A DNA stretch of 64,000 bases from Schmidtea nova (Eukaryota), in NCBI GenBank assembly GCA_044892505.1, contig CM097882.1, forward strand, positions 216,008,001 through 216,072,000, in the 5' to 3' direction. Made by a program: the position numbers and the translations under genes. The notes beneath the pieces are model-generated. The model was not told the DNA's origin. It did not search any database and saw only the letters and a list, made by a program, of their open reading frames with translations. Below are positions 1,489 through 64,000 of the stretch, in pieces (the stretch's first letter is position 1; each line of letters begins with the position of its first letter).

Positions 1489-1872
1489 ATGGAACAACAG
1501 ACAGTGGATGAATTTCTAGTGGCTCAGCGAAATTCGGCAATAACAGCTATCACTCCGATGTTGCCCAAGGGGCGAGAGTTGTAAGTTCTGCCTCACTAAA
1601 TAACGAGGACCCTCAACGCGTTGATGTATAAATGGAGACGAGAACTGGGAAGGAAGTGCCCATTTTCCATTTGGGAGAATGGTCCGGACTGAATCTTGTA
1701 TCGAGAAGGTCCTGGATGGTCAGTCTTCGACAAAAGAGACCCCGCAACTACGGCATCGTTCGTCATAGTTTTGACGGATTCCGAAGGAAATCCAGTGACA
1801 GCGATACAATGGGGATACATCTCGCCCCACGAGTTACTAAAGTTGGGATTAAAGCAGTGCAACTTACCGTAA
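1489..1872 (+). pseudogene. Unassigned cassette gene A, copy 1 (stop-interrupted)
   Basis: Frame from ATG 1489 reads MEQQTVDEFL...RKCPFSIWENGPD*ILYREGPGWSVF...CNLP* with three internal stops. The KCPF..ILYRE..W motif resembles KSPW..FLYRE..W in the ORF at 51389-51730. Confidence 0.4.
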
Positions 1873-2131
1873 CCTGCCCAAGGACGTCCCAGACTAAAGT
1901 TTTCGCTAGCTCAAGTTCGACGAGCTCCCATCAATCGCGGGTTACACATTTTTCCCGTATATGGCTTCAAGATTAAATGCTTACACTAACAATGATATAT
2001 TAATGGATGAATAAAATGATCTGTGAATTTCATATTAAATTGTGTTGAGTTTAATTCTCATTTATTTATTTAATTTATTTATCTAATGGACAAAAAGTAG
2101 TGTCAGTCAATAAAAATGGAATTTCTTCCTA

Positions 2132-2515
2132 ATGAAATTTTATTTACCCTTCAGTATGAATACCGAAACTAGTCAACAGAGTGAACTGGATAAGGCTTGG
2201 AGGATCCGCCGAGCTTTGGAAAAGGAATTGACACAGGAAAAGACACTACGGACTAAGGCCGAAGCTCAAATTCAATACTTGCGGAAAAGCTGGTTCGCAC
2301 CAGCTCGTATGAAGGAGCAGATGAGTCGTGCGGAGCGAACACAGAAAACCGCAGATGACTATCGTACGGAAAGGGAAGCGACCAAGATAGAATTATGCCG
2401 ATGTCTCCATTCCGTGACAACCTCCTTCATAGATCCGGAATTACGGTCGCAAATTCGACCCATTACCTACCAGAAATTGGTAGGGGAACAAAAAATGGCC
2501 TGTTCGACGGCCTAA
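2132..2515 (+). CDS. Unassigned cassette gene B, copy 1 (charged, predicted coiled-coil; likely element-borne)
   Basis: 127-aa ORF in GC-elevated sequence. SWFAPARMKEQMSRAERTQKTADDYRTEREATKIELCRCLH aligns without gaps to TWFHPSVVKEMMKNKDRTQRALDEQSLEFAATKIELNRCLH at 50790-51038. Confidence 0.5.
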   Translation: MKFYLPFSMNTETSQQSELDKAWRIRRALEKELTQEKTLRTKAEAQIQYLRKSWFAPARMKEQMSRAERTQKTADDYRTEREATKIELCRCLHSVTTSFIDPELRSQIRPITYQKLVGEQKMACSTA

Positions 2516-3516
2516 ATGCAATAATTACTCCAAGTCCGATGGAGCCTACAGTCGTACCGAACCCCCTAGAAAAATTAAAGAAGAGAAAAAGGATCGGTTC
2601 CAAGCGCCGATGGCAAAGAAAATTGTTCGCCTAGCAGTTGCAAGTTCAAGTGGATAACATGAAGGAGATGTCGGAAGCAGAATGGTTATCGGAGATATTT
2701 CCTCCCGAGGGAATCTTTGCTGAATTTTGCGACAAATAAAAGAGTTGAATATTATCAGATTTCTGTGTTGTTTTTCTCTGTTTTCTGTTTTTTTTTGGTT
2801 GCGTAATTAATAATAAATAAATTTAAAACCACACGTTCTCATAATAAATGAAATAGCGTAAGTCCTTCTAAGGCAGCCATGAACCCGTAAACATAAATGG
2901 GGAGTAGTTCTAGCAATGGAGCTCACCTGCCCATCATTGTTTAACCACCTTGCGCATCACCAACTTGGTTATTAAGGGAAATAATCAAGGGCGCTCGAGT
3001 GTGAATTAGCAAACATTTATGTATGATCATGGATGGGGAATCCCTAGTCACTATCGGAACTGTTCAATCTAACCCCTCCATGAACCCAGCAGGTGTATGG
3101 TGCAGAAACCCTAAATTTCATATGTACTTTAATGGGCTTGAAATTTTTGCTGAAATTCCTTTGTTTTCGTAACCTTGACCAACTTTTCGACCAATCAGAC
3201 CACAGGAAAATCGATTTTTGATGGATGTTGTCATATGCAAAGATGAGTCATGCATTTTAATGAAAATTTTATTAACTAAGTACCATTAACTGACATTGTC
3301 AATGTGACAATAATTGATTTTTTTTCTTTTTCTTTATACTTGTACTACCTTTATTTTTATTCAGTGCACAAAACTTTGGGAACCACTGAAATAAGTGAAT
3401 AGAAAAAAATAATGCGTATTTACGTTTTCAGTGCATCAGCGCACTTTTTGTTGTAGAGAGAAATCGATACAAATTAAATATAAAGTATTAGAGAAAACGA
3501 AATAATAATTATATTA

Positions 3517-6500: not shown

Positions 6501-9500
6501 TTCACTAACAGGTGCAAATATTTATTAAAATTATTTATTTAAAATATAGCTTGTTATTTATCGTTTATTATAATTACTATTTTCATAATTTAAGTGTACT
6601 GGTTCTGGATAAAATGAAAAACCCGAAGTTTTTGAAAGGGTTCGGTTCCCGGTCTTTTTTGACAAAAAATTAAATTGCGACGTCGGTACCAAGGTTCAGT
6701 TTCAATTTTATTCGTTTTGCAATAAACCGGAATGCGAGAATATTATGCAAATAAAATTTGCAACACGAATAATAAACTAATTTTTCATTTTTTTCGTAGC
6801 AGAATACAGTAAACAAAACTTCTATTATATTTTTTGCTTATTTTTCAGCAAAATTTTAAGTAAAACACTATTCAAATCATTAAATATTTAATTTTGATGA
6901 CCTTTGATCATTATTTTCAATTTCAGATATTTTCATTTTTACGACAAAAGATCAAATATTTTTTCATTGGAACAAGAATTTTTGGCATTATTTTTTATTC
7001 TTAAACAATTGAAAAAGACTTATTGAATGAAAAAAAAATTGATCGAGTTTTAAAAAATAAAAAAATATATTAAGTAAAATAATCCAGTCTATATTTACCT
7101 ATTTTCAAGAATGAAAATAATATCCGCAAAAAAAATTTATTTTATATAAAATAAATATTACCGTTATCAATTTTTGTATTTCATAGAATAATGCATAAAT
7201 TTTATTCATAATACTTATGACAACACGAATTAGATTAAAAAACAATCAATTGAAAAATTAAGGAAAATATATTGATTCATTAATAAATATTAATTGAAAA
7301 TCAATATGAAATATACTAAAATCATTTAAAAATCTATTTTTTATAAAAATATGAAAGGTTTTTTAGAACCTCGAGAACCTCGTTTTTTAGAAGGGTTCAG
7401 TTTTCTAATTTAACCCTTAAATGCATTGTGATGGAAATTCGCATCGTGCCAAATATTTAAATATAATTATTTATGATTAATGACAGCGATATATTTTTTA
7501 GTCTGGCAATAAGATAAACAGTCTGTCTATGGATTCAAGTGAAAATAAAAATAAAATATATGTTTTTGGTCAATAATAATTGTGATAGCAATACAAAATT
7601 TTTAATGCAATATACAAAAAATCATGCATTTAAGGGTTAAATGGATTTCTGAGTTTACTTCTTTTTGATTTTCGACTTCTGGCTCCGATCACATTAAAAT
7701 ATATGAATAAAGTTTTAAATAATAAATATTTTTTGATTGTTAATAAAGCTTATATGTGATTTATCCTGATGAAAAGTATTCAGAGATTTTAGAAAAGGTA
7801 AATGTAGGTCGAAGCATTAAAAACAGTGACATGGCGTATGATCTACTTATTTCAATTTGTCTTTCCTAATTGTTCAACTTTTAATAAAAAATGATATGAA
7901 AATAGTGTGAAAATAGTCATAAAACGTTTTATGGGACAAATAACAAAAATATTACCTAAAACTAGCCCTTATCCGACTACTAGAATTAATAAAACCACGA
8001 TATTTACAAATGATATGATAATCTCTGGCATCTATGAGACGGACACGCGAATCGTTTGTTGTTACCAATATCTGAAACGTTATTTTCATATTAAAGAAAA
8101 GGTTTTATTAAAGAACTTTGCAAGAATCAGTAGGATCAACTTCTATGGCAGTAACACGGCAATATTTATTTTTTCTATGCGAACTTTTAATAGCCATTGA
8201 CGTTATATATTCTAACTGAAATTAGAAACCTCATTCACACATGGTACGAAATGCAACTATAATTACTTCGGCTGTATAAAATAATATTCGACCATCATAC
8301 GTTCCAACTGCTACTTTTGTGGCTTCACAAACAAAAACAGCACATGTAATTACAGTTTTTGGAGGTAGTAAAGAATTGCTTGACGACTTCAATGGTGAAA
8401 ACATAGAGGCAACTGGTAAAGAATTTGGTAATAAGGCTTCGACCCAATAGCGAATCTTTTTATCTGGTATATTCCATAGGCGTAACTTTCCATCAAGACT
8501 TCCAGAAAGAAAATATCTATCGTCCTTAAATAGATTTCATGATTTTCATTTCAAATAATTGCTTTTACTTAACTTGATAAAAAAGTATACAATAAAATAA
8601 AAAAATAATAAAGTTAAATCGAAATTTAATTATCATTTACAAATATTATTTTCAATCTTTTGAATTCCAATTTCAAAGCGCACCTAAAAATGCGCTCATC
8701 AAATTAATCACCAATCCTTTGAAAAGTTACCTTAGTTACCTTAGATTGATAAGAGAAAGATATAACCATTTTAGGATCAAAAATGTCTTATGACCATGGT
8801 ATTGTATACTTAATTTTTGAATTATTTTTTTTTTAAATACATAAACGTTATCAATTAAAACAAATTTAAGGCCTAAAAACTTTATTTTTCTCCATATGAA
8901 GAAAAAAAGGAGAAGAAAAAGTTGTCCTGTATGAATAGCATTTTCCTTCGATTGATCAAAGAAGGCTGTTTCTGGATGAGTGTTGGTTATACTCACTGAA
9001 GCTGCATATAAAAGAACAAAGCAGTGATGGTTTGACCCTTTTCCAAAAACTTATAATGGGCAATTCCCGCTTGAGTCCAGCAAACACAATAAAACCTTCA
9101 TTGGTGCTGGATCAATTGGTGACAACCAATAATAAGAACGCTTAGGACTAAAGTACAAGTAAACAACCGATCAAGAAAATGTTCATTTTCATTTCGTGAA
9201 AGCTTTGCGAACAAATGGTAAGACGGTTTGTTTTGTTATCCTTTGACAATTCATGTGGGCCAATTAGAAGTTTTAACAATAATTTAATATTGGTATAATA
9301 TAACGATATTATTCTATATTTTTGAGGATTGTTAGTTGAATAAAAAAATGAGGATTTACACAATCGTTACGTCCTATATTCAATCAAACAATCATTTGTA
9401 CAAACTCAATTAGTTCATCAAACATTCATCATTCAACATACAGAAAAATAAACAATCTTTATTTCATAATAGTTTTCCCTTAACCCTTTGAGGGCTGAAT

Positions 9501-10464: not shown

Positions 10465-13400
10465 CACAGACACACACAAACAAGTCCTATAAATGACCTA
10501 CATCTGTATACCTCTGCCCTCAATTTGTCAATCTTTATAGTATAACAATATATGACGCACACACATCATCTTACATGTAGTTACATCTACTCTACCCCAG
10601 TTTTAGCAATTGAAAATGGGCGATAATCGTAAAGGGGTTGGGAAACGCTGACTTACAGCATGATCTCCGAAAACGGTACACTGTCTCGGCACCTTTTGAG
10701 TCAAGTTTGTATTTAGAAAGTAAACAATCTTGAATTAAAATGTTATTTGTTGGCATTAAATTATTCTGAAAGGTAACATGTTGATTCCACTAGAACAATT
10801 CCACTAGGCACTATTTTACTCGGATAATTCCACTAGACACAATTCCACTAGGTAACAAGGGTTAGGGTTAGGATTAGGGGGTTAGGGTTGTTACCAATTG
10901 TTACTAGTCTAGTTGAATTGCGCTAGTGGAATTGTGTCTGGTGGAATTGTTTCTAGTGGAATTATGTCTAGTGGAATTATGTCTAGTGGAATTATGCTAG
11001 TGGAATTGTGCTATTGGAATTGTACTATTGGAATTGTGCTAGTGGAATTGTGATATTGGAATTGTGCTATTGGAATTGTGTTTAGTGGAATTGTTTCTAG
11101 TGGAATTGTGTCTAGTGGAATTGTGCTAGTGGAATTGTGCTAGTGGAATTATGCTAGTGGAATTGTGTCTAGTGTAATTGTGCTATTGGAATTGTGCTAT
11201 TGGAATTGTGCTATTGGAATTGTGTTTAGTGGAATTGTTTCTAGTGGAATTGTTTCTAGTGGAATTGTTTCTAGTGGAATTGTTTCTAGTGGAATTGTGT
11301 CTAGTGGAATTGTTTCTAGTGGAATTATGTCTAGTGGAACTGTGTCTAGTGGAATTGTGCTATTGGAATTGTGCTAGTGGAATTGTGCTATTGGAATTGT
11401 GCTATTGGAATTGTGTTTAGTGGAATTGTGCTAGTGGAATTATGCTAGTGGAATTGTGTCTAGTGGAATTATGCTAGTGGAATTGTCTTTAGTGGAATTG
11501 TTTCTAGTGGAATTGTTTCTAGTGGAATTGTGTCTAGTGGAATTGTGCTATTGGAATTGTGCTATTGGAATTGTGTCTAGTGGAATTGTGTCTAGTGGAA
11601 TTATGCTAGTGGAATTGTGTTTAGTGGAATTGTTTCTAGTGGAATTGTTTCTAGTGTAATTGTGCTATTGGAATTATGCTATTGGAATTGTGCTAGTGGA
11701 ATTGTGCTATTGGAATGAGCCTAAAATCTTCTGAAATATCAATTAAACAATTCTCGTCAAATTTGAATGTATCATATAAGAGGAATAAGTAGATAATACA
11801 CGTGGTATCATTAACAACAATCAAAAAATCTTCATGTCTGTTTATATTCAAAAATCACACGAACATTTTATTTGTAAAATTGCAAAGCAACATATATGAC
11901 TATAATTACGAAACTACAACATTGCGGGAAATTTTGTATAGCTTTCAAAATTCTTATAAAATCACTGATTAAAGAGATTTTCGGTCAATAGTAATTAATG
12001 TTGAATATTAAGGATATAGAGACAACTACCAACAAAATTGGGAAATATGCGAACGCTATGAATAGTGTCCATTTTCCAAGGCCCTTGCCCAACATATAAA
12101 CTTATATGCACATTTTTAAATTCAAACTATATTCAAAATAAAAAGAAAGATGTTGCAATAAATCCCAGTTATAAGATAAACCAAAGAAAAAATTTTAAAA
12201 AGCATAATTAGAAAATAATAATGTGCAATTATGTGTAATTTTGTGATAGTATCAAAATTAAATTATTAGATAATTTATTAAATATGTTAAATTTAAATTA
12301 AATTCATCTTACTTTTGGATGAAAGACAACTGTTGGAACTGTATCATTATGATTAAATATACAAAGACATTCTCTACGACTAATATGCCACAATCGAACT
12401 TGTCTGTCCATGCTTGTTACTAATAAGAAAAGATTTTTTGACCAAACTAAATCTGTTATAACTCCTTCATGACCTCGATAAATTATTAGCGGTTTTGATC
12501 GAAATGGAGTTCTTCTTCCTTGCTCAATGTCATCATCGCCAGAACTACATGTACTTCCACAACCCTTTGAAAATGATATCATAGTTAGAATAGAAATAAA
12601 AATGCATAAAAATGAATATATAAAACTATCAATTTAAAACTTCACCAAATAAATCAAGCAAAAGTGCATAAATAAAACTCATTAAAATATTTTGTTTGAA
12701 AATAATGTGATGTAAATTAATTTATTTTAAGTCACGGTTTCTCAAACAAGAAGGAATTTTAACTTTGTTCGTGTTTAACTATTCGTGACAATAGGTTTAG
12801 CAAATGTCCGTTGGATGAAAAAGATAATGTAAAAAGGAGGCTCGTTTGATTTTAGAACCGATGCTAATACAAGAGTATCGGTGTGTAGATGCAATAACAA
12901 CAGTGTAGTAAATCCACGTTCAAATACAATGGGTGTCAAACCTGCTGGTCAGGCGTCACACTGTTTGTCAGTGACTAAAGCTAGAATTCAAATACATCAG
13001 CCAAAAATTGTGAAAGCATATAATGAACACATGAGAGGTAGAACGAAGGGACTAAATTATATAAAAATATAGATATATCAATATATGTGGTATGTCTGTT
13101 TTTTCACTTATCTTATTGATGTTACAGTGAATGATGCATGGTAGTTGCATAGAATATGTGCAGACAAAAGGGCGATGGATCTTTAAATCTTTCGCAGGAG
13201 AATAGTCAGATTTTATTTAGAGCGATATAGCAATTTACTACATCCAGGACAATGAGGGAGGCCTCAACAAAAGTCTGAGAGAAGCTGATTTGATATGTAT
13301 ACACAATGAATAATTCCCCAAGAAAAACAGACTCACTGTACCCTTTGTCATTTGAAAGCCACAAGTAAATGTGAAAATAAGAAACAATGGGCTTCATGTT

Positions 13401-27368: not shown

Positions 27369-30300
27369 TTATTTATTTATGTATGTATATAAAGCATTTC
27401 CACGACAACAGTTACAATAGACATTAGAGACAGTATTCTAGGAAAAGGTGAAATTAAGCAATTCTAATCCGTACAACCGAAGGATGTGTATGCAATAACA
27501 ATAAATAAACACAAAAATACAAAGTAGGCTGTTTATAAAAAGAAAATATTTACAGCTTAGATATATTGTATGCAAATTTGCTTATATGTATTCCAATAGG
27601 AATTTTCTTTAAAAAATTTAAATCTTTAATGCTTGAAAACAACATCAAAATAATTAGTTGATGGAAAACTAAATTCAGCAAAAATATTAACAAACAGATG
27701 CAACAAATTTTACGTCTTATTTCAGAAGATTTGGTCACTTATATTATGCTGTCTGTTTCTCATTTTTAAAAGCTGAAATTTTTTTCATTAAATTTTTTAC
27801 TCAATAAAATTAAATATAAAAAAGTGACAAACAGCACTTTAAAAGAGACATCGCCAAATATTTGTGTTGAATAGTGATTGAAAAAGTTTGATACATTGTC
27901 TAATAAATCAAAATAAACTGACTCAAAAAAAGTTAAAAGGCGAAGAAAATTAATCCGTTTAATGATTAAAGTCGCAATTATAAATATCATCGCAGTTATT
28001 ATTGATTTTTAGATATCAGAAAGAGTGAAGAGTGATTTTTAAAATTAAAATTGGTCATTTGAATTTACACAATGATTTAAAGACAAACTTTAAACTTTAA
28101 ACGTTTTAAAACCAAGTCGAAAAAAAAGAGAAAAAAAGTATGTCAATAAGTAAAATATTTCGTAAGGAAAAAAAGGTTACATGTGAAATTTTGGAAACTA
28201 TAAACCAGCAGGTATCAAAAAACGATTCGATGCACTATCCTAAACGAACAAATGCTAATGGTCCGACTAACTAATTCTTTTGAAGGTTGTTATTGCAAAG
28301 AAACAAGATATAACAGGATCAAACGATGTAAAAAAATATCCAAGAAAAATGCAGCTTACAAGTAGAGATTATTAACGTATAAAATTCTCAGTTAAATCTA
28401 ATAATTTATAAACAAATGAGCCGTTTTTATTGAGGAATTTAAGATTTGCGATTGAACTAAGAAATATTGCCAAGCATTAATAAATGTCTGAAATGCATGT
28501 GGAGATATAGCAATGCATTGACACTGTCTTTATAAATTCGAAAAGAAGACACCACCGATAAACTAAAGTAATAATTTTTAAAGTTGATCTCATATCACTT
28601 TCAATGAAAACCCGATCTAATATACATTCATAACACAGCAAAACTTTATGGGTAACATAATAATATTCAATATATATAAATGATTTTTAAATTACGACAT
28701 ATTTTAAAATAGCTAAATAATTCAAATAAACAAATCTCAAGTCGAAATACAACATGTTAATCAGTCAACATTTCGTATTAGGAATGTGAAAGAAAAACTA
28801 ATTCAAAATTCAAAACAGAGCACTTTTATTGATTGATTTAAATGCAAATAAACGTGAATTCTGTGTGAATTCATTAGAACAGAGCGTTCTCAATAACTAG
28901 AACAATTGTGTAACAATTGTTTTCATTCATCTTCATTGTTTTCAGATTATCGATTAATATTTTGCTTTTTATTTAACAAATATTGATTTATTGTTTAAAA
29001 AGAAATTGAAAATGTATTAATGGTGATATAAATAATTTATTCACCAATTAAAAAAATTACTAATTTTACTAATTTTTAGGTATTTTGTGAGATTTATAAC
29101 GGCCAGGGTTAAAAACCAAGCAACTACTAGTTGTAACTAATTATCTATTAAGCCTGTCAGATGACGGCCACATTTTTAAAAATTAATTTTAAAATTATTA
29201 CATATTAATATCAATTGTAAATAATTATATAATTTATCTTAAAAATAATGCAAAAGTACGGACGGAAAAATATATATTTTAAGTTGTCCGGAATGAAATG
29301 CCCGATAAATGGATTATAATTCAAGTCGTACAAATATATTTAAGCATTTATTATATAATCAAAATATGATCCATCAATATTAATAATCTCTTGCCATCGT
29401 TGCAGGAGCTTTTCTATATATTCTTTAAAATAGATCTCATGTCTGAAGTCCAAGAAAGTGATAACTGACGAATTTATGTCATTCCAAATCTTTGAACGTC
29501 ATGCCCTTGATATAAAGATTTAAATGTCTAAATAAGTGGAAATCAATTGGTGATAGATCGGGTGAGTAAGGTGGATGCGGTAAAACTTCAAATCCTAAGT
29601 CGTCTAATTTTTTTACAGTGACTTTCGATACGTGAGGCCTGGCGTTATCATGCAGGATAATTGGACCTTTTCTATTTCCAATTGCAGGGTGACTAGTGGG
29701 GAGTGTTTCATGCAATTTTTCTAGTTCTACACAGTATCGTTCAGAATTGATTGTTGTACCCATTTTCAGGAAACAATAATATATTACACCATACATAGAC
29801 CACCAGACTGAGAGCATGACTTTCTTTTGGTGAAGTTCCTGTTATAGGAAACTGATTTAAGCATTGATGCTTATCCAATCATTCTCCTGACCGCTTAAGA
29901 TTATCATATTGAATCCATTTTTCATTGAAAGTAATAATATTATTAAGAAAAGAGGACTTTCGATGTAGTGCTTGAGGAGATGAGCAAGTTTTTAATCTGT
30001 TAAATTTCTGCAATTCAGTCAATTCACGTGGGACCCATTTTGGAGCTTTTTGACCTTACCAGTTGTCTTTAAATTGTCATGAAATGTTGTTTTTGAGACA
30101 TACCGATCTATAGCAAGTTCTCAAAAAGATTTTGTTGAATTCTGAACAACAGTTTGACGTAAATCTTCCTCCGTCAGCTTGATATTTGGTCTATCGCAAG
30201 GCATATTTTCGAGATTAATTTCTCCATCGTCAAATTTTTAAACCAACGCTTAATAGGTCTTTCATTAACTGTATCGCTCCCAAAAGCATTATTAATATTC

Positions 30301-50789: not shown

Positions 50790-51105
50790 TTAGTTGTACA
50801 GTTTGGCCAAAGTTTGGGGTAACTTGAAGATAAACGTAACTGGATGGATTACTACCTTTAATTCCTGGACGTGCAAACACCGGTTCAGCTCAATCTTAGT
50901 GGCTGCAAATTCTAGTGATTGTTCGTCTAGCGCACGCTGAGTTCGATCTTTGTTTTTCATCATCTCTTTCACTACACTCGGATGAAACCAGGTGCATTTC
51001 ATCTCCTCCAGAAGTTTGTCGATTAATCGTCCCTTCAAGCAATCTTATTCGTCTGAGTAATTGGCTCTTTTTATCGGAAGAAATGTTTTTACGGAGGATT
51101 TTCAT
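50790..51105 (-). pseudogene. Unassigned cassette gene B, copy 2 (frameshifted)
   Basis: MKILRKNIS... shifts frame into TWFHPSVVKEMM...ATKIELNRCLH..IHPVT. Homologous to 2132-2515. Confidence 0.55.
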
Positions 51106-51388
51106 TCTACAACCAAGTTATGTTTATAAGTTATATTCGATATGAAAGTCATCAAGACATCTTATTCGGTTTTTCCTTTGGTAAGCACGCTCTACGATAT
51201 TAATATTACGCCACTTCACTTCATTCACTTTAACCTATGATTAGACAATTTCACCCACCACCATCAACACTATCGTCATACATTCAACAGCAACCATACG
51301 AGTTAACGATCAAAGACCTTGTTATACTAAACCAATTCTATTCAAATCAACTACGCACTAAACAATATAACACATCCTTTTCACAAAA

Positions 51389-51730
51389 TCACGCTGTCAG
51401 TTGTTCGGCTTTCTCTGATTCCGGGATCCAATCTTGGACGAAGTCACTATCCTCTTGCAGGGTTTTTTCCTCTCGATAAAACACCATGTTGGGTTTCCAA
51501 CATAACTTTTCTCGGTATAAGAATACCTCATACCATTTGATATGGCTTGCCCACGGAGACTTTGTCTGCCAGGCATCCAAGAATTCACAAGGTAGGTTCG
51601 TGTACCCTATTTGCTCACCTGTACGTAGATTTCGAGGCCTATCAAGGATGATGTATCCCAGCTGCTGTATTTCTCGGACATCGAGTGGCTGTAACAGGAT
51701 TCTCTCAAACGATTTAAGCAAAGTTTTCAC
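51389..51730 (-). CDS. Unassigned cassette gene A, copy 2 (113-aa ORF)
   Basis: Open frame with a non-ATG start in the track. Preceded on the minus strand by TATATATACCGCCATC (about 51816-51832), a TATA plus GCCAT-type motif. Confidence 0.45.
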   Translation of the reverse strand: MKTLLKSFERILLQPLDVREIQQLGYIILDRPRNLRTGEQIGYTNLPCEFLDAWQTKSPWASHIKWYEVFLYREKLCWKPNMVFYREEKTLQEDSDFVQDWIPESEKAEQLTA

Positions 51731-53249
51731 TTAAAATTTTACCGCTAAAAACGTTTTAAAAGTTTTTACAACAAAATTCCAGAAAATTCTGAGCAAATTC
51801 TAATGAAATCTATTTTGATGGCGGTATATATAGTTGCTCAAATTGTTATTTTCATTGATGCATTAGAACAAATTGTTCTAGAAGGAATTTTCCGATTCTT
51901 GAAAATTAATTTTAATAATTTTACGCAAAACTGAATTATTATTTTTGCATAGAATTTTAAATAAACTCTAAATAATTTATTTTTGATCTAAAATTTCATT
52001 TTTAAATCAAAGTTTTTCATAATTTAATAAGTTTATCATAATTTATAACTAACACGATTTTCTTTCTTATTTATTGAATTTTTACATTAAAATTTGAAAT
52101 TTCCTCCCGAAAAAATGCTAATTTTTCCTAGTGTGCTATTCTATTACACAATTGATGTTCTCACGCTATATATGTGTTTTTTTCACGTTTACACTCAATA
52201 CGCTTTTGTTCGTTTCAATTTTAACGTGTTTTAAACAGTTATTTCATGTGTTCTGCTGTTACTGTGCCTACCCTGGTGTTTTGACCCGTAGAATTATAAA
52301 CTTGCTTCTTGCGCGCACTCTACACACTGTATTACCGCGCCATTTAAACAAACCTCAGTTTTTTGCCCAACAGTCCTAATCTACAGTAAGTATGTATATT
52401 TTTGCTATATATAATTTAAATTGTTATTATAGATACTTTAATTGTTGCCTGCCTGACCATTAATTTATGCCCTCTGGTGTATGAAGATATTTCACAACCT
52501 TTGTTGAAATCAACAATGCCATTTATTGGAGAGCATCATTGAGAAATGTAAATTTACAATTATATTAAAAAATGTAAAAAAAAATATTTTTAGAAATACA
52601 GACAATTATTTTATTGTGCCTCACCCAGCTTAATCTGTAGAAGTGAAACATCGAAAAACATAAAATAAATTTTAATTTTTAACTCAAATTTTCATAGATA
52701 TACAGAACATGACAAAATATTACTAATAGAAGTAATGAAACGGAGTGAAAAGGGGTGAAACGGTATAAAATGCTTGTCGCCAAATAGTCTATTTCTAGAC
52801 CCCATAGAAAGTTTATTTAGTTAATTAAAAGGCGCTATCAGAAAATATGTTGCGGCAACCAGAGGATGGAGTACCATTGATTACAAAATTTGAATAGAAT
52901 AAGTCAAAACTTTTGTGGAGGAAGAATAAGTAAAAGGATCTTCCTAAAGTCTTTTTTCAAAGAGGAAATCTTGAGGGATATTAACTTAAAATATTAACTT
53001 AAAATATGTAATTAAATTAAAATATGTTAAAACAGCTTTAAAATATGAATAAAAAGCATAATAAATAATAATTACTCACCAATTGCCTGTAATAAGTGTC
53101 TTTGTGGCCATTAATTACAGACTGTTGGTGTACTATATTTAAATTTAGGTTTTAGATTTCGTTTGAGAAATTTCTTTCGTGCAACCTGATTGGTTGTTTT
53201 ACATAAAGTAAGAAATCTATCTTTGTAATTTGTAGTAAAATTATCGATT

Positions 53250-59073: not shown

Positions 59074-60519
59074 TTACAACGAATTTATATATTTCTCAAG
59101 TTGATATAAAGTTGTTTTGTTCAATTGCTCTAAGTTAAATTTAGGCTGACTCGTCGCGACATTATCCAATTCATATTTCGAAATGATATCCTTAATTTTT
59201 TTAACGATGTCACCGTTATTCATCAGTGTTTTAATTCGAGTCATCAACTCACGAAGGCGAGATTTGTCATATAAATTCGGTCCAGTTTCACGTGACAAAT
59301 CTGCTTGATTTGTTTTATTCGCTATATATTTCTCAAGTTGATATAAAGTTGTATTGTTCAAATTCTTTAGGTTAAATTTCGGTTGACTCGTTGCGCCGTC
59401 ATCCAATTCATATTTCGAAATAATTTCCTTTATTTTAATAACACTTTCAGGGTTATTCATCATTGTTTTTATTTGAGTCATCAACTCACGAAGACGAGAC
59501 TTGTCAAATGAATTCGGTTCAGTTTCACGTGACAATTCTGTTTGATTTGTTTTATTCGCTATATATTTACACATTATTAATCAATTATAAATCATATTAC
59601 TGGCGACAGGCTTACCCGTTGGAAGTTTAGAATATAAGAAATCAACTAGTTCAGTCAATTCATTTAGCGTTTCATTCGACAATGAAATGAGATCAAAAGT
59701 ACAGATACCGTTTTTATCAACGGAGACAGATTTATCGTTTTTAAGTAAACTATATATGTGCAACATGCTACTTTCAGAAGACAAGAGGAGATCAATCTTC
59801 CTAGTCAATTCTAATAATTCATTTTTACGGCCAGGCTGTGATAATTTCGACGAATAGTTGTCTAGATTTTAAAAAATAAGTTAAATAAACTCAGTATTCA
59901 AATCAGCCGTACTTATAAGATTAAGAATGTCATTTCGGCAATTAGGTTTCAATTTTTGGAAATTAATTTCAATTGAGTGGTTTGAAAGCAAATTCAAATC
60001 GTCGTATTTGAATAGAATTTCACAAAATGATTTTTGAAAAAGCGAATAACTCCAAAAATTAGTAATTTTTTGCTTTAATTCTTGGTATTCAGATGCTATA
60101 TATTCAAATGAAAAAGTAAATTTTATAATTATCGTTTAAAATATTTCTTACCACAACTGGTTGTAGAGGAATTTGAATGAGGCGTGGAATAATCTGACGT
60201 GAGACTATGAGTGTCTGAGGGTTTGGATTTACGATTTTTCCTATTAATATAATCGCGAATCCTATGAATGGTAATTGGCTGAAGATTCTCTAGTAATTGT
60301 AACTTTTCTGCTATTTCATGGTTTTGACAAGTTTCATACTTCTTGACAATCGACTTGAGATTTTCATCGTTAATTACATTGGGAATTTTAGCCTTTAAAA
60401 TCAATAAATTTTTATGATTCAGTGGATTAAATTTCTCTGAAAAAAATTCGAAAATAAAATTTTTCGATTTTTTTAATATTAGACTAACTAATTTTGCGAC
60501 TACTTTCAACCGGTGCCAT
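59074..60519 (-). CDS. Intact 5-exon gene encoding a 409-aa protein of five tandem ET/AHD-like domains
   Basis: Exons 60519-60489, 60436-60152, 60095-59913, 59861-59616, 59558-59074. Four GT-AG phase-1 introns of 51-57 nt; 1230 nt with no internal stop. Repeat ends: LENLQPITIHRIRDYI, INFQKLKPNCRNDILNLI, FDLISLSNETLNELTELV, FNLKNLNNTTLYQLEKYI, FNLEQLNKTTLYQLEKYI (compare BRD4 ET DFETLKPSTLRELERYV and AF9 AHD FDLCSLDKTTVRKLQSYL). Confidence 0.82.
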
Positions 60520-62789
60520 GATTTTTACAACTTAAATGTGCTTTATTGGTTAATATTTAAACAATATTTAAATCGTTTTTTTTAATTTCCGTAAAATTTT
60601 TCTCATAATATTAATTAAGGAAATTTTATTTTTTAGGGAAATTACTATAATTACATTAAAAATTTTTATCTAAATTTTAAAATGTAATTAGTTATTGTAT
60701 TTTTTAAATTTTTATATCTAAGTTAAAAAATTGAAAACTTGTTCTAGAATAAATTGCAAAAGTATAAATTGCAAAATATACTTTTTATCAAAATGAACTT
60801 TTTAAATTAAACTATTTTGTAATAAAAACTAATTAGAATTTAATTAATAAAATAGTAACTAATATGATATATAATATTAAATTATTATTTAAACAAATTA
60901 TTTTTAATTTTTATATCTTAATTACAAATTAATTTTACCTTCAATAACAAAATCCAAAAAATATATAATTTTTCCCTATTTTTGTCTAATCTATCTAAAA
61001 AGGTTTTTAATGTAATAATGTTTTTCGTGGATCTAATTTTAATGTCTTCCTTCTAAAATAGCGAAACCTCGCAATTTTATAAAATTTTGAAGTACCAAAA
61101 GTCAAGAGATACATAACTACCTACTGCAAAACAGTGGAGTTCTAGATAATTTCGATGATATTATGTCCTGGGGTTATTCAGAAACGCACGAAATGCAAAA
61201 GTAATAGAAATTTCAAAAAGGGTAAAAATCAAAAATTTTAACCGGAAATTGGTAATCGGTGATATAAAATGTATGTACATGAACTTTCTCGGGAATATAG
61301 AAATAACCCTGACTGTTGCTTTGGCTCTATTCCTCAACAACCCTACATATAAACCTAGCAAAAACCCTTCTTGTTATCCGTCACCTAGTAACGTTGGAAA
61401 TGGAACAAGTCAGTGGACATCCGTAAAAAAAGAGCTTAGAATGAGTCAAAACTTCTATTGAACGAATGTCTCGAGTGTGTTCAAAGGCAACCGATAGAAG
61501 GTATAATGCCCATTTTCGTCCCGCACTTAATCTCTCTCATATTTTTCACTTAAATTCCTTTGATAATTAAAATAAAATCTATACAAAAGTTGTTAATTAA
61601 TTAATTAATTAATAAATAAATATTATTAATTAATTTGATAAATATTGCACATAAATTTTATTACAAGACCCTTTAAATGAAATATAAATTGAATGTGCCG
61701 TTAGCTAAAATACGTATGAGCTAGATGCACTTAATGATAGTAATATAAGTTATATGAATCAAATCATAATTCATACAACACACATATACGGATATATAAT
61801 TATGCAGTTACATTATTATATGGTGTTGAGTTATTACATTAAAAAAATTGTGTCCGACTAATCATTGTCAGTTATTTATAAAATCGATTTGATTTTTCGA
61901 GTTCTTCTTCAATTGTCCCAGCAATCGCGCTTCTAGTCTACGATGACTTCACGCTCGAACCGATTTACTCAGCTTGAATTTCTTAGGCTTCGCAACAGTA
62001 TCTGTAATTTTTGCCTCTTCCTAGATTCGGTTCGAGGAAATAATTTTATGTTATTACTCGACGTAGAAGGTATCAACACATTAGCCAGATCAAACTTCAC
62101 TCTTTTACGAGCTAATTGAACTTCTCGTTCTCGGATAACCAACTTTAGCGCGCGATTTCGGTCTGTCTTTCACCGTTTACAGTTATAGGAGTTGTATTTG
62201 TTTTTTTACGTTGGCAATTTAGACAGCTTTGTACCATGGTATCTCCATGGTACGACATAGCTACTTAAAATTTTCTAGACGCTCTCCTAATGACTGGTTC
62301 TCGGTCCATGATAATTTCTTTTCTTTCCACTAGTCTCACATCGTTAATCTATAAATCACTGAACATTTACACGGAACCAAATGAAGTAGTTATATTTGTT
62401 TAACTAAACTTGTATGTACAGCATTCATTAATTTTAAATTCATCCGAAGCTCCTCGTAACTCGGAAAATAGAAATTTTAGATACAAAATAAATGTAATAG
62501 TTAGCGAGTATTTTTATGATGTAGTATTGTGTCGCAAAAATGGCTAAATATTAATGGTCTTTCCTATTAATAGGTGTAGATGAAGTGGTTAATTTTATCA
62601 AAATTCAATTGAAATCCCTTATATCAGGATTTATCATAAATAAATTCGTTACATTAATTTCTATGGATGTTTACATAATTAAAATGTTACTTTAAAATGT
62701 CTTATATTAAAATATCATAAAACTTAAACATTTCTATTTCTTGCACCAGTTCAATTCGTTCATCTAAAGTCATAAGTAATGATGTCTAA

Positions 62790-63641
62790 GACAATTTAGG
62801 GATTCCATAAAAGTTCAATGGTTCCTATCGATTATGAGCTATGGCTCGAAATTGCTGGAATAAATCATTCAATAGAAACACGCCAAGTTTCAAATAAATT
62901 AACTGATAATCCATCAATGTTTCACAACCTGATTCTTCCCATATATGTAGGGTCTTTTCATATTATTTTTTTGAAACACAATCTCAGATTGGGTTTAATT
63001 CTGTTGTTGTTCCCAGAACTTCTTGACTAATGGCAAAGTTATATGGAAATATTCCTTTTGATTCTACTATAATTCCATTAAATTCGGATTTCGTAATGGA
63101 TAATTGTTCAGTATTTTCACAGCGTTAGATAAGAAGTAATTTACAAACTGTTAAGAGTCAATAAATTTTATTTATATTCCACCAATGTTTACAATAAGTG
63201 ATAGAAATGTTTCAGTGTTAAGAGGAATGCAGCTTGAATTCCAATCCAGAAAACAATTTAACTAATGTTTAAGTATATAATGTAAATCATAACCCCTCAA
63301 ATTGTGAAACATAATGGGCAATATTTCATTGATTTTCCTTGACATATTGCATTTAATACATGCTAGGCCAATATATTTTCCTGTAAAATGAACGGGATCC
63401 AGACCTTTTCTATTATCGTTTTCTGGCACAAGTAACAAATTGTATATATTTTGAAGGATTAAATTTCATCTGGCGAATGTGGCGACATTAGCTTTTTTCC
63501 TTCATTGATGTAATGTCTTAAAACAATAGAATAAGTGTGGACTGTGGAACACAGGAAATTACATAATTGATGAGTCATAAACAATAAAAATCGAACGACT
63601 TCCTTTTTTTCATTAATTTTATATATGCATGATGATGTCAT
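62790..63641 (-). pseudogene. Polinton protein-primed DNA polymerase B, N-terminal/exonuclease fragment
   Basis: CYLCQK..EKVWD.VHFTGKYIGLACIKCN, PIMFHNLRGYDLHYILK, CIPLNTETFLS, KFIDS, SKGIFPY, WEESGCETLMDYQLIYLK..LLNDLFQQFR. Multiple stops. Confidence 0.88.
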
Positions 63642-64000
63642 AATTTATTTTATTTTTTGCACATACAATGACAAAATAATAAAAATTTATCTAAGGTCAA
63701 TTTAAGGGAAAAGGTTCAGGTCATCTTAAGGTCAATTAAAAAAAATTCAAATGCTTAAAAATTTCAAAAAAACTAATAATCAACATTTATTAAAAAATAC
63801 ATTAAGGGATTCTCGCATTGTTGATTTTGCAAATCCAAGACACTGCTCCTATTAGATCTACTTTATAGCCTTGAATCGATAAATTGAAAGACCAATTTTC
63901 ATAATACATAAATACAACGGATTGAAATGCATCTTGAAAATAAGTTTTTATTTTGTTGATAAATATTGTTTCATTGTAAGAAGATTTCTTGTTAATTTTC

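What the first reader, a model, noticed from the sequence alone, without database searches (positions are those of the whole stretch)
59074..60519. Intact gene for a protein made only of five tandem ET/AHD-like domains
Seen: a clean spliced 409-aa ORF with five ~60-70-aa repeats and short linkers, and no bromodomain or YEATS domain. Repeat 3 (NELLELTRKIDLL...FDLISLSNETLNEL) looks like the AF9/ENL ANC1-homology domain; repeats 4-5 look like BET extraterminal domains. Known: these related folds bind short motifs in AF4/AFF, DOT1L, CBX8, BCOR, NSD3 and CHD4, and BET ET binds gammaretroviral integrase tails; they normally occur once, paired with an acetyl-lysine reader. Inference: a reader-less multivalent module could be a scaffold or a dominant-negative sponge for elongation/chromatin complexes, or a decoy/tether for retroelement integrases. 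I know of no described protein with this architecture.
Basis: partly seen in the sequence, partly recalled or inferred. Interest (0 to 1): 0.82.

Follow-up and report, generated by a model that had tools for sequence, protein, structure and literature searches.

The report
Reader-less protein of five ET-like domains
An intact five-exon gene encodes a 409-residue protein made only of five diverged copies of the small peptide-docking domain (ET/AHD) that normally occurs once next to a histone-mark reader, so it is probably a multivalent adaptor; the layout is rare and undescribed in papers, but not unique in sequence databases.

Summary
On the minus strand, 60519-59074, five exons joined by four GT..AG introns of 51-57 nt give one open frame of 409 codons plus a stop.

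- **Domain identity.** All five ~60-residue repeats belong to the ET/AHD fold group. R4+R5 together pass Pfam's cut-offs for BET and AHD. Each repeat matches an independent ET profile above 200 shuffles. A profile of the repeats finds BRD4/3/2 ET first in the PDB. The AlphaFold models of R2 and R1 superpose best on AF9 AHD (TM 0.84) and BRD4 ET (TM 0.66).
- **No other domain.** No bromodomain, YEATS or other domain was found in the gene or in the 3.5 kb upstream.
- **Real gene.** A metagenome contig carries a 30-40% identical homologue of exons 1-3 with the same three intron positions and phases. R4 and R5 are a 237-nt tandem duplication with dN/dS about 0.4.
- **What did not hold.** The AHD-versus-ET split between repeats is not supported. 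The architecture is not unique: marine plankton contigs encode 4xET-only proteins and Meloidogyne hapla has a 2xET-only protein.

The most likely function is a nuclear adaptor that docks several short motifs at once. That is inferred, not shown. I rate it a new variant of a known kind, of moderate interest.

The parts
59074..60519 (-). Whole gene from ATG to stop: five exons, 409 codons
   Evidence: The splice model was checked; the sequence was read.
60489..60519 (-). Exon 1 (31 nt, ATG, ends in phase 1)
   Evidence: An in-frame stop lies five codons upstream. L001 has an equivalent 28-nt ATG exon that also ends in phase 1.
60152..60436 (-). Exon 2: repeat R1 plus a Ser/Thr-rich linker
60237..60425 (-). 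Repeat R1 (residues 15-77), the most diverged ET-like module, basic (pI 9.5)
   Evidence: ET reference HMM 15.2 bits against a shuffle maximum of 11.8. hhalign against the ET alignment gives probability 65%, P 6e-5, over 63 columns. AF2 pLDDT 85; the best TM matches are BRD4 ET at 0.65-0.66. No Pfam ET/AHD hit.
60222..60242 (-). Basic cluster just after R1, a candidate nuclear localisation signal (inferred)
   Evidence: Read. The L001 homologue also has a basic cluster at this position.
59913..60095 (-). Exon 3: repeat R2 (residues 108-167), near-neutral (pI 6.8)
   Evidence: ET HMM 15.4 bits against a shuffle maximum of 5.6. hhalign probability 85%, P 6e-6. AF2 pLDDT 93, pTM 0.76. Foldseek TM 0.84 and rmsd 1.4 A to AF9 AHD, 0.73 to Taf14 ET, 0.68 to BRD4 ET. 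37-40% identical to the L001 exon.
59616..59861 (-). Exon 4: linker plus repeat R3 (R3 = 59632-59820, residues 181-243), acidic (pI 4.4)
   Evidence: Pfam AHD E 0.0075 and BET E 0.033, both aligned over almost the full model length. ET HMM 20.9 bits. hhalign P 7e-5.
59074..59558 (-). Exon 5: repeats R4 (59320-59505) and R5 (59077-59268) with their linkers, plus the stop at 59074-59076
   Evidence: Pfam BET 33.6 bits (cut-off 24.5) and AHD 33.0 bits (cut-off 27), two stretches each. Per repeat, the better of the two models scores 19.7 bits (R4) and 24.6 bits (R5). hhalign probability 93%, P 4e-7.
59086..59568 (-). Tandem duplication of a 237-nt unit (79 codons) that made R4 and R5. It reaches into the last ~10 nt of intron 4
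   Evidence: 87% identity with no indels. NG86 gives dN 0.126, dS 0.315, ratio 0.40.

Best explanation
This is a real, lineage-restricted protein-coding gene. Its 47-kDa, basic (pI 9.1) product is a string of five diverged ET/AHD-superfamily modules joined by Ser/Thr/Asn-rich linkers of about 13-30 residues, with no chromatin-reading or catalytic domain.

By analogy with the solved ET and AHD complexes, each module most likely captures a short extended motif of a partner protein, which adds a strand beside the loop between helices 2 and 3 (the alpha2-alpha3 loop). The modules differ strongly in charge: R3 is acidic, R2 near neutral, and R1, R4 and R5 basic. They also differ in the residues of that loop. 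So the protein would dock several different partners at once, and two alike through the young R4/R5 pair.

On this reading it acts as a reader-less hub or adaptor for transcription and chromatin complexes, probably in the nucleus. It would be brought to its site of action by its partners, not by histone marks.

Shown: the gene model, the domain identity, the absence of other domains, conservation, and the duplication history.

Inferred: peptide binding, multivalency, nuclear location and chromatin role.
For: Gene model:
- Intact frame, canonical introns, in-frame stop upstream of the ATG.

Domain identity:
- Pfam BET and AHD pass their cut-offs on exon 5.
- A profile of the five repeats retrieves BRD4, BRD3 and BRD2 ET as the top seven PDB hits, with AF9 AHD next among real domains.
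- An independent ET HMM and hhalign support every repeat.
- The AF2 models of R2 and R1 match AF9 AHD, Taf14 ET and BRD4 ET best by TM-score.
- A library-wide profile search returned bona fide ET proteins as its real hits.

Constraint:
- L001 carries a collinear homologue of exons 1-3 at 30-40% identity, with all three introns at the same position and phase.
- R4/R5 dN/dS is 0.40, and most of the 18 replacements fall in the linker and predicted loop positions.

No other domain.

Different charge per repeat.

Binding mode of the fold: the matched PDB entries are peptide complexes, namely AF9-CBX8, AF9-DOT1L, Taf14-Yng1 and BRD4 ET-NSD3.
Against: - No repeat alone reaches Pfam's cut-off.
- R1 and R2 have no Pfam hit.
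- The Foldseek E-values are not significant, as expected for 60-residue helical domains, so the support rests on TM-scores.
- The AF2 alignments were shallow (7 rows) and included one bona fide ET fragment and the sister repeats.
- The R1 model puts a helix where ET and AHD have the strand-forming loop.
- In the alignment, the acidic loop of BET ET domains is kept only in part in R2, and is replaced by neutral or basic residues in R4 and R5. Binding of classical ET ligands therefore cannot be assumed.
- There is no transcript evidence, no partner, and the organism is unidentified.
- An upstream exon beyond the window, or one splicing in just before the ATG, cannot be excluded.
Confidence: 0.6

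Rival explanations
1. The model is only the 3' part of a longer BET-like or YEATS-like gene. Reader-domain exons would lie upstream, beyond base 64000 or spliced in just 5' of the ATG, so the protein is not reader-less.
For: Only 3.5 kb upstream is in the window. An AG directly after the upstream in-frame stop could in principle serve as an acceptor. A bromodomain plus 2xET protein exists in Pygsuia biforma.
Against: The ATG exon, its length class and its phase are conserved in L001, which also has an in-frame stop upstream and no other gene called in its 640 nt of 5' flank. No Pfam domain was found in any ORF of 45 aa or more on either strand between 60520 and 64000. The sequence just upstream is very AT-rich and looks non-coding. 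The 4xET proteins P0001 and P0012 are complete single-exon reader-less genes.
Confidence: 0.12
2. The array is a decoy or tether for integrases or other proteins of mobile elements. It would soak up the motifs by which such proteins dock on host ET domains.
For: Only general knowledge that ET domains are docking sites for some viral proteins. One matched PDB entry is such a complex. The R4/R5 duplication is young.
Against: Nothing links the locus to mobile elements. There are no long direct or inverted repeats within 52-64 kb. The only transposon relic seen is a mariner-type DNA transposase fragment 30 kb away. R4/R5 dN/dS of 0.40 indicates constraint, not an arms race. The acidic loop that meets basic ligands in BET ET is mostly lost.
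Confidence: 0.05
3. It is a young, fast-evolving or decaying lineage-specific ORF with no maintained function. The ET likeness would be a relic of duplicated BET exons.
For: The repeats are only 17-28% identical to one another apart from R4/R5. The library of 1.84 billion representatives holds only one recognisable relative, a single exon. There is no transcript evidence.
Against: The frame is intact across five exons with all splice sites canonical. A distant homologue has conserved intron positions and 30-40% identity. dN/dS is below 1. The hydrophobic pattern is kept in all five repeats.
Confidence: 0.1
4. The repeats are generic small helical bundles, for example PAH-like, and not ET/AHD domains.
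For: Pfam PAH_ZNF598 scores 24.2 bits on exon 5, just under its cut-off of 25. The R1 model is a four-helix unit. The Foldseek E-values are not significant.
Against: BET and AHD outscore PAH and are the only families recurring across R3, R4 and R5. The profile-versus-PDB search ranks seven BET ET chains first. The highest TM-scores are all to AHD or ET structures, with none to PAH. The library-wide search recovered ET proteins.
Confidence: 0.06

Closest known systems
BET proteins (BRD2/BRD3/BRD4/BRDT and relatives): the ET (NET) domain, Pfam PF17035
   Same: A module of about 60 residues with three helices and a strand-forming alpha2-alpha3 loop. It is the best sequence match of the repeat profile in the PDB, and Pfam BET passes its cut-off on exon 5.
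   Different: BET proteins have two bromodomains and one ET. Here there is no bromodomain and there are five modules. The acidic loop is largely not conserved, and four of the five modules are neutral or basic.
AF9/ENL ANC1-homology domain (AHD), Pfam PF17793
   Same: Related fold. The R2 model superposes on AF9 AHD at TM 0.80-0.84 and rmsd 1.4-1.5 A. AHD scores about as well as BET in R3-R5.
   Different: AHD occurs once, C-terminal to a YEATS reader, and no YEATS domain is present here. No repeat alone reaches the AHD cut-off.
Yeast Taf14 ET domain
   Same: A hub module that docks a common motif found in many complexes. The R2 model matches at TM 0.73.
   Different: It is a single copy behind a YEATS domain. 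No sequence-level hit was seen.
Unnamed 4xET proteins of marine plankton (P0001, 287 aa; P0012, 290 aa; Tara and JGI contigs L002-L006)
   Same: Reader-less proteins made only of tandem ET domains. P0001 is the top hit of the library-wide search with the repeat profile.
   Different: They have four canonical ET domains (Pfam 135-148 bits), single-exon genes and very short linkers. There is no evidence of orthology, so they may be an independent invention. Neither has a name or a paper.
Meloidogyne hapla 'NET domain-containing protein' A0A1I8BMA1 (P0007, 242 aa)
   Same: Two ET domains and no bromodomain in the annotated model.
   Different: Its ET domains are canonical and BET-like. Only an automated annotation exists. 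Most other 'ET-only' database entries found with it are one-ET fragments of BET genes.
Pygsuia biforma bromodomain + 2xET protein (P0009)
   Same: It shows that ET domains duplicate in tandem.
   Different: It keeps the bromodomain.

Membership tests
ET/AHD domain superfamily (Pfam BET PF17035 / AHD PF17793) | Sequence match to the family model at the curated cut-off | tested here: met
   Exon 5 (R4+R5) scores BET 33.6 bits against 24.5 and AHD 33.0 against 27. Singly, the repeats score 14.7-24.6 bits, which is under the cut-offs, and R1 and R2 have no Pfam hit. The feature is met at protein level, not per repeat.
ET/AHD domain superfamily (Pfam BET PF17035 / AHD PF17793) | Three-helix fold with a strand-forming alpha2-alpha3 loop | tested here: met
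   The R2 model (pLDDT 93) matches AF9 AHD at TM 0.84, Taf14 ET at 0.73 and BRD4 ET at 0.68. The R1 model (pLDDT 85) matches BRD4 ET at TM 0.65-0.66 but has a helix in place of the loop. R3-R5 were not modelled.
ET/AHD domain superfamily (Pfam BET PF17035 / AHD PF17793) | Binding of a short partner motif by strand addition | not testable with these tools
   Inferred only from the peptide complexes among the matched PDB entries.
BET protein family | One or two N-terminal bromodomains | tested here: not met
   No bromodomain hit in any exon or in ORFs up to the window end. It is not a BET family member.
BET protein family | Acidic alpha2-alpha3 loop of the ET domain | tested here: not met
   In the alignments only R2 keeps part of it, and R4 and R5 have neutral or basic residues there. 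pI values are R1 9.5, R2 6.8, R3 4.4, R4 9.0, R5 9.5.
YEATS-AHD proteins (AF9/ENL, Taf14, Yaf9 type) | N-terminal YEATS domain | tested here: not met
   No YEATS hit.
Reader-less tandem-ET proteins (P0001/P0012 type; unnamed) | Two or more ET modules and no other domain | tested here: met
Reader-less tandem-ET proteins (P0001/P0012 type; unnamed) | Common descent of the arrays | tested here: inconclusive
   P0001 is the best library hit (67 bits summed over four repeats). But the repeats are no closer to P0001 than to other ET domains, and the gene structures differ.
PAH (paired amphipathic helix) domains | Match to a PAH model or fold | tested here: not met
   PAH_ZNF598 scores 24.2 bits, under its cut-off of 25. 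No PAH structure appears among the Foldseek matches.

The most novel reading that the evidence does not exclude
A natural, reader-less array of ET/AHD modules with different specificities would work as a hub. It would either physically couple several transcription or chromatin complexes, or hold back their docking motifs from the cell's BET and YEATS proteins. Together with the 4xET proteins of marine plankton, it would define an undescribed class of 'ET-array' adaptors that arose more than once.
Probability: 0.3. Interest if true: 0.6.

Novelty: new variant of a known kind. Interest (0 to 1): 0.45.

Why it matters
ET and AHD domains are the docking sites through which BET, AF9/ENL and Taf14 recruit elongation and chromatin complexes, and they are drug targets. 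It would also offer natural variants of the groove for studying motif specificity. It is a domain-architecture novelty, not a new principle.

Tried and rejected
Searches that found nothing useful:
- Word search with exon 5: no hit.
- phmmer of exon 5 against the PDB: only a chance ECT2 match.
- Exact look-up of the exon-5 ORF in public assemblies: not on record.
- Two JGI metagenome scans, with R2 plus its L001 homologue and with R4 plus R5: nothing.
- No paralogue in the window.
- No Pfam domain in ORFs upstream or downstream of the gene.
- No long repeats around the gene, so there is no sign that it sits in a mobile element.

Hits I rejected:
- Five of the ten library hits (P0002 fn3 array, P0003, P0006, P0008, P0010) are unrelated repeat proteins that add up weak matches.
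- A search with the Meloidogyne 2xET protein returned mostly one-ET fragments of BET genes, so 'ET-only' database entries are in general not evidence for this architecture.
- A PAH-like identity.
- The AHD-versus-ET split among the repeats.

Not achieved:
- The organism could not be identified. There are no tRNA or Rfam hits, and the neighbouring ORFs are uninformative.

Full report
**Observation**

The region lies in a window of about 28% GC with no N runs. On the minus strand an ATG at 60519 opens a 31-nt exon. It is followed by exons 60436-60152, 60095-59913, 59861-59616 and 59558-59074. The four introns are 52, 56, 51 and 57 nt long, all GT..AG and all in phase 1. The joined frame is 1230 nt, which is 409 codons and one terminal stop. 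An in-frame stop lies five codons upstream of the ATG. The window has only four ORFs of 130 aa or more, and the last exon is one of them.

**How the searches were run**

The joined 409-residue product was never sent to a search or folding tool, so that step is left out.

I did build the joined product inside scripts, for three purposes:
- to count its length and stops;
- as a local tblastn query against the window and against L001;
- for composition and pI.

**Domain identity**

Pfam results:
- Exon 5 (R4+R5) scores BET 33.6 bits (cut-off 24.5) and AHD 33.0 bits (cut-off 27), with two stretches each.
- Exon 4 (R3) scores AHD E 0.0075 and BET E 0.033, aligned over nearly the whole models.
- Exons 2 and 3 (R1, R2) give no ET/AHD hit.
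- Singly, R4 and R5 score 15.6-24.6 bits, under the cut-offs.

Four further lines of evidence cover all five repeats:
1. A profile of the five aligned repeats (A1) ranks seven BRD4, BRD3 and BRD2 ET chains first in the PDB (E about 0.007), with AF9 AHD next among real domains.
2. The same profile, run against 1.84 billion representative proteins, gave ten hits. The real ones are ET proteins: a 4xET protein, a 2xET protein, a bromodomain plus 2xET protein and an ET fragment. One further hit is a homologue of R2.
3. An HMM built only from nine ET domains of those unrelated proteins scores R4 23.5, R5 22.4, R3 20.9, R2 15.4 and R1 15.2 bits. The maxima of 200 shuffles per repeat were 4.8-11.8 bits. 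hhalign against the same alignment gives P values of 4e-7 (R4/R5), 6e-6 (R2 group), 7e-5 (R3) and 6e-5 (R1 group).
4. AlphaFold2 models:
   - R2 has pLDDT 93 and pTM 0.76, with a helix-helix-hairpin-helix layout. Its best full-length superpositions are AF9 AHD (TM 0.84, rmsd 1.4 A), Taf14 ET (0.73) and BRD4 ET (0.68).
   - R1 has pLDDT 85 and four helices. Its best matches are BRD4 ET at TM 0.65-0.66, and nothing else exceeds 0.51.

Caveats on the models:
- The Foldseek E-values are not significant for such small domains.
- The AF2 alignments were shallow.
- R1 is the weakest case.

**No other domain**

Pfam at E up to 10 lists nothing credible besides ET/AHD in the exons. ORFs on both strands from 60520 to 64000 and from 54.5 to 59 kb have no family hit. 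The N-terminus has no hydrophobic signal-like stretch. A basic cluster follows R1, and the homologue in L001 has one at the same place. I read it as a possible nuclear localisation signal, by inference only.

**Evidence that the gene is real and constrained**

- The R2-like hit P0004 lies on a 1567-nt ENA metagenome contig (L001, 23% GC).
- L001 carries a short ATG exon, an R1-like exon (30% identity) and an R2-like exon (40% identity), in the same order.
- Its three introns interrupt the frame at the same places and in the same phase as in the window (read). There is an in-frame stop upstream of its ATG.
- The contig ends before an R3 exon could be seen.
- R4 and R5 are a 237-nt tandem duplication, 87% identical and without indels. 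dN is 0.126 and dS 0.315, a ratio of 0.40.
- The duplicated unit reaches into the last bases of intron 4. The R4/R5 boundary therefore contains a copy of the intron-4 acceptor sequence, in the right phase.

**Mechanism**

The solved structures that the repeats resemble are all peptide complexes: AF9-CBX8, AF9-DOT1L, Taf14-Yng1 and BRD4 ET-NSD3. In these, from established knowledge of the families, a short extended motif adds a strand next to the alpha2-alpha3 loop.

The five repeats keep the alternating hydrophobic pattern of that loop and of the flanking helices. They differ in its polar residues and in net charge: pI 9.5, 6.8, 4.4, 9.0 and 9.5.

The most likely reading is a multivalent adaptor that docks several different motifs, with R4 and R5 binding alike. 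It has no reader of its own, so it would be positioned by its partners. Competition with the cell's own BET and YEATS proteins for the same motifs (a sponge) is a variant of this reading that the data cannot separate. None of this is shown.

**Comparison and novelty**

The protein is not a BET or YEATS-AHD family member, because the reader domains are absent. It is a member of the ET/AHD domain superfamily.

The literature searches found no description of tandem ET-only proteins. The architecture is nevertheless not unique in sequence space:
- P0001 (287 aa) and P0012 (290 aa, 62% identical) from Tara and JGI marine contigs are complete single-exon genes with four canonical ET domains and nothing else.
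- Meloidogyne hapla has an annotated 2xET protein.
- Most other 'ET-only' entries are fragments of BET genes.

The window's own product, or anything 50% identical to it, is absent from the library. The family is therefore very sparsely sampled.

**Limits**

- The organism was not identified. The short introns, the AT richness, a mariner-type transposase relic and WD40 exons suggest an invertebrate animal, but this is a guess.
- There are no expression data.
- Upstream exons beyond the window cannot be excluded.
- R3-R5 and the full-length protein were not modelled.

All comparisons rest on sequences returned by the tools.

Noticed in passing
window 59319-59331 (minus strand, R4/R5 boundary) compared with 59559-59568 (end of intron 4): The tandem duplication copied the 3' splice-site sequence of intron 4 into the coding R4/R5 junction, in the same phase. 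Use of this internal acceptor would give an in-frame isoform lacking R4 (79 residues shorter). Whether it is used is unknown.
   Followed up: partly
window 10907-11716: A minisatellite of about 56 copies of a 15-nt unit, 89% matches. It explains the strong GC and AT skew of the 10-12 kb bin.
   Followed up: no
window 29482-29841 (-): A relic of a mariner-type DNA transposase (Pfam Transposase_1, 51.6 bits). It is only a fragment of the DDE domain within one ORF.
   Followed up: partly
window 8234-8536 (-) and 12307-12633 (-): ORF pieces with WD40 repeat matches (best to the WDR36/Utp21 and WDR3 propeller models). They are probably exons of one WD40 gene on the minus strand that spans the minisatellite.
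   Followed up: no
window 1599-2806: A GC-rich island (40-49% GC against about 28% for the window) with overlapping ORFs of 86-133 aa on both strands and no Pfam hit. Its nature is unknown.
   Followed up: partly
window 50793-51731: A second GC-richer patch (38-45% GC) with ORFs on both strands. The two tested had no Pfam hit.
   Followed up: partly
L002-L006 (marine metagenome contigs): Complete single-exon genes for 287-290-aa proteins made of four canonical ET domains and nothing else, from an unidentified planktonic eukaryote.
   Followed up: partly
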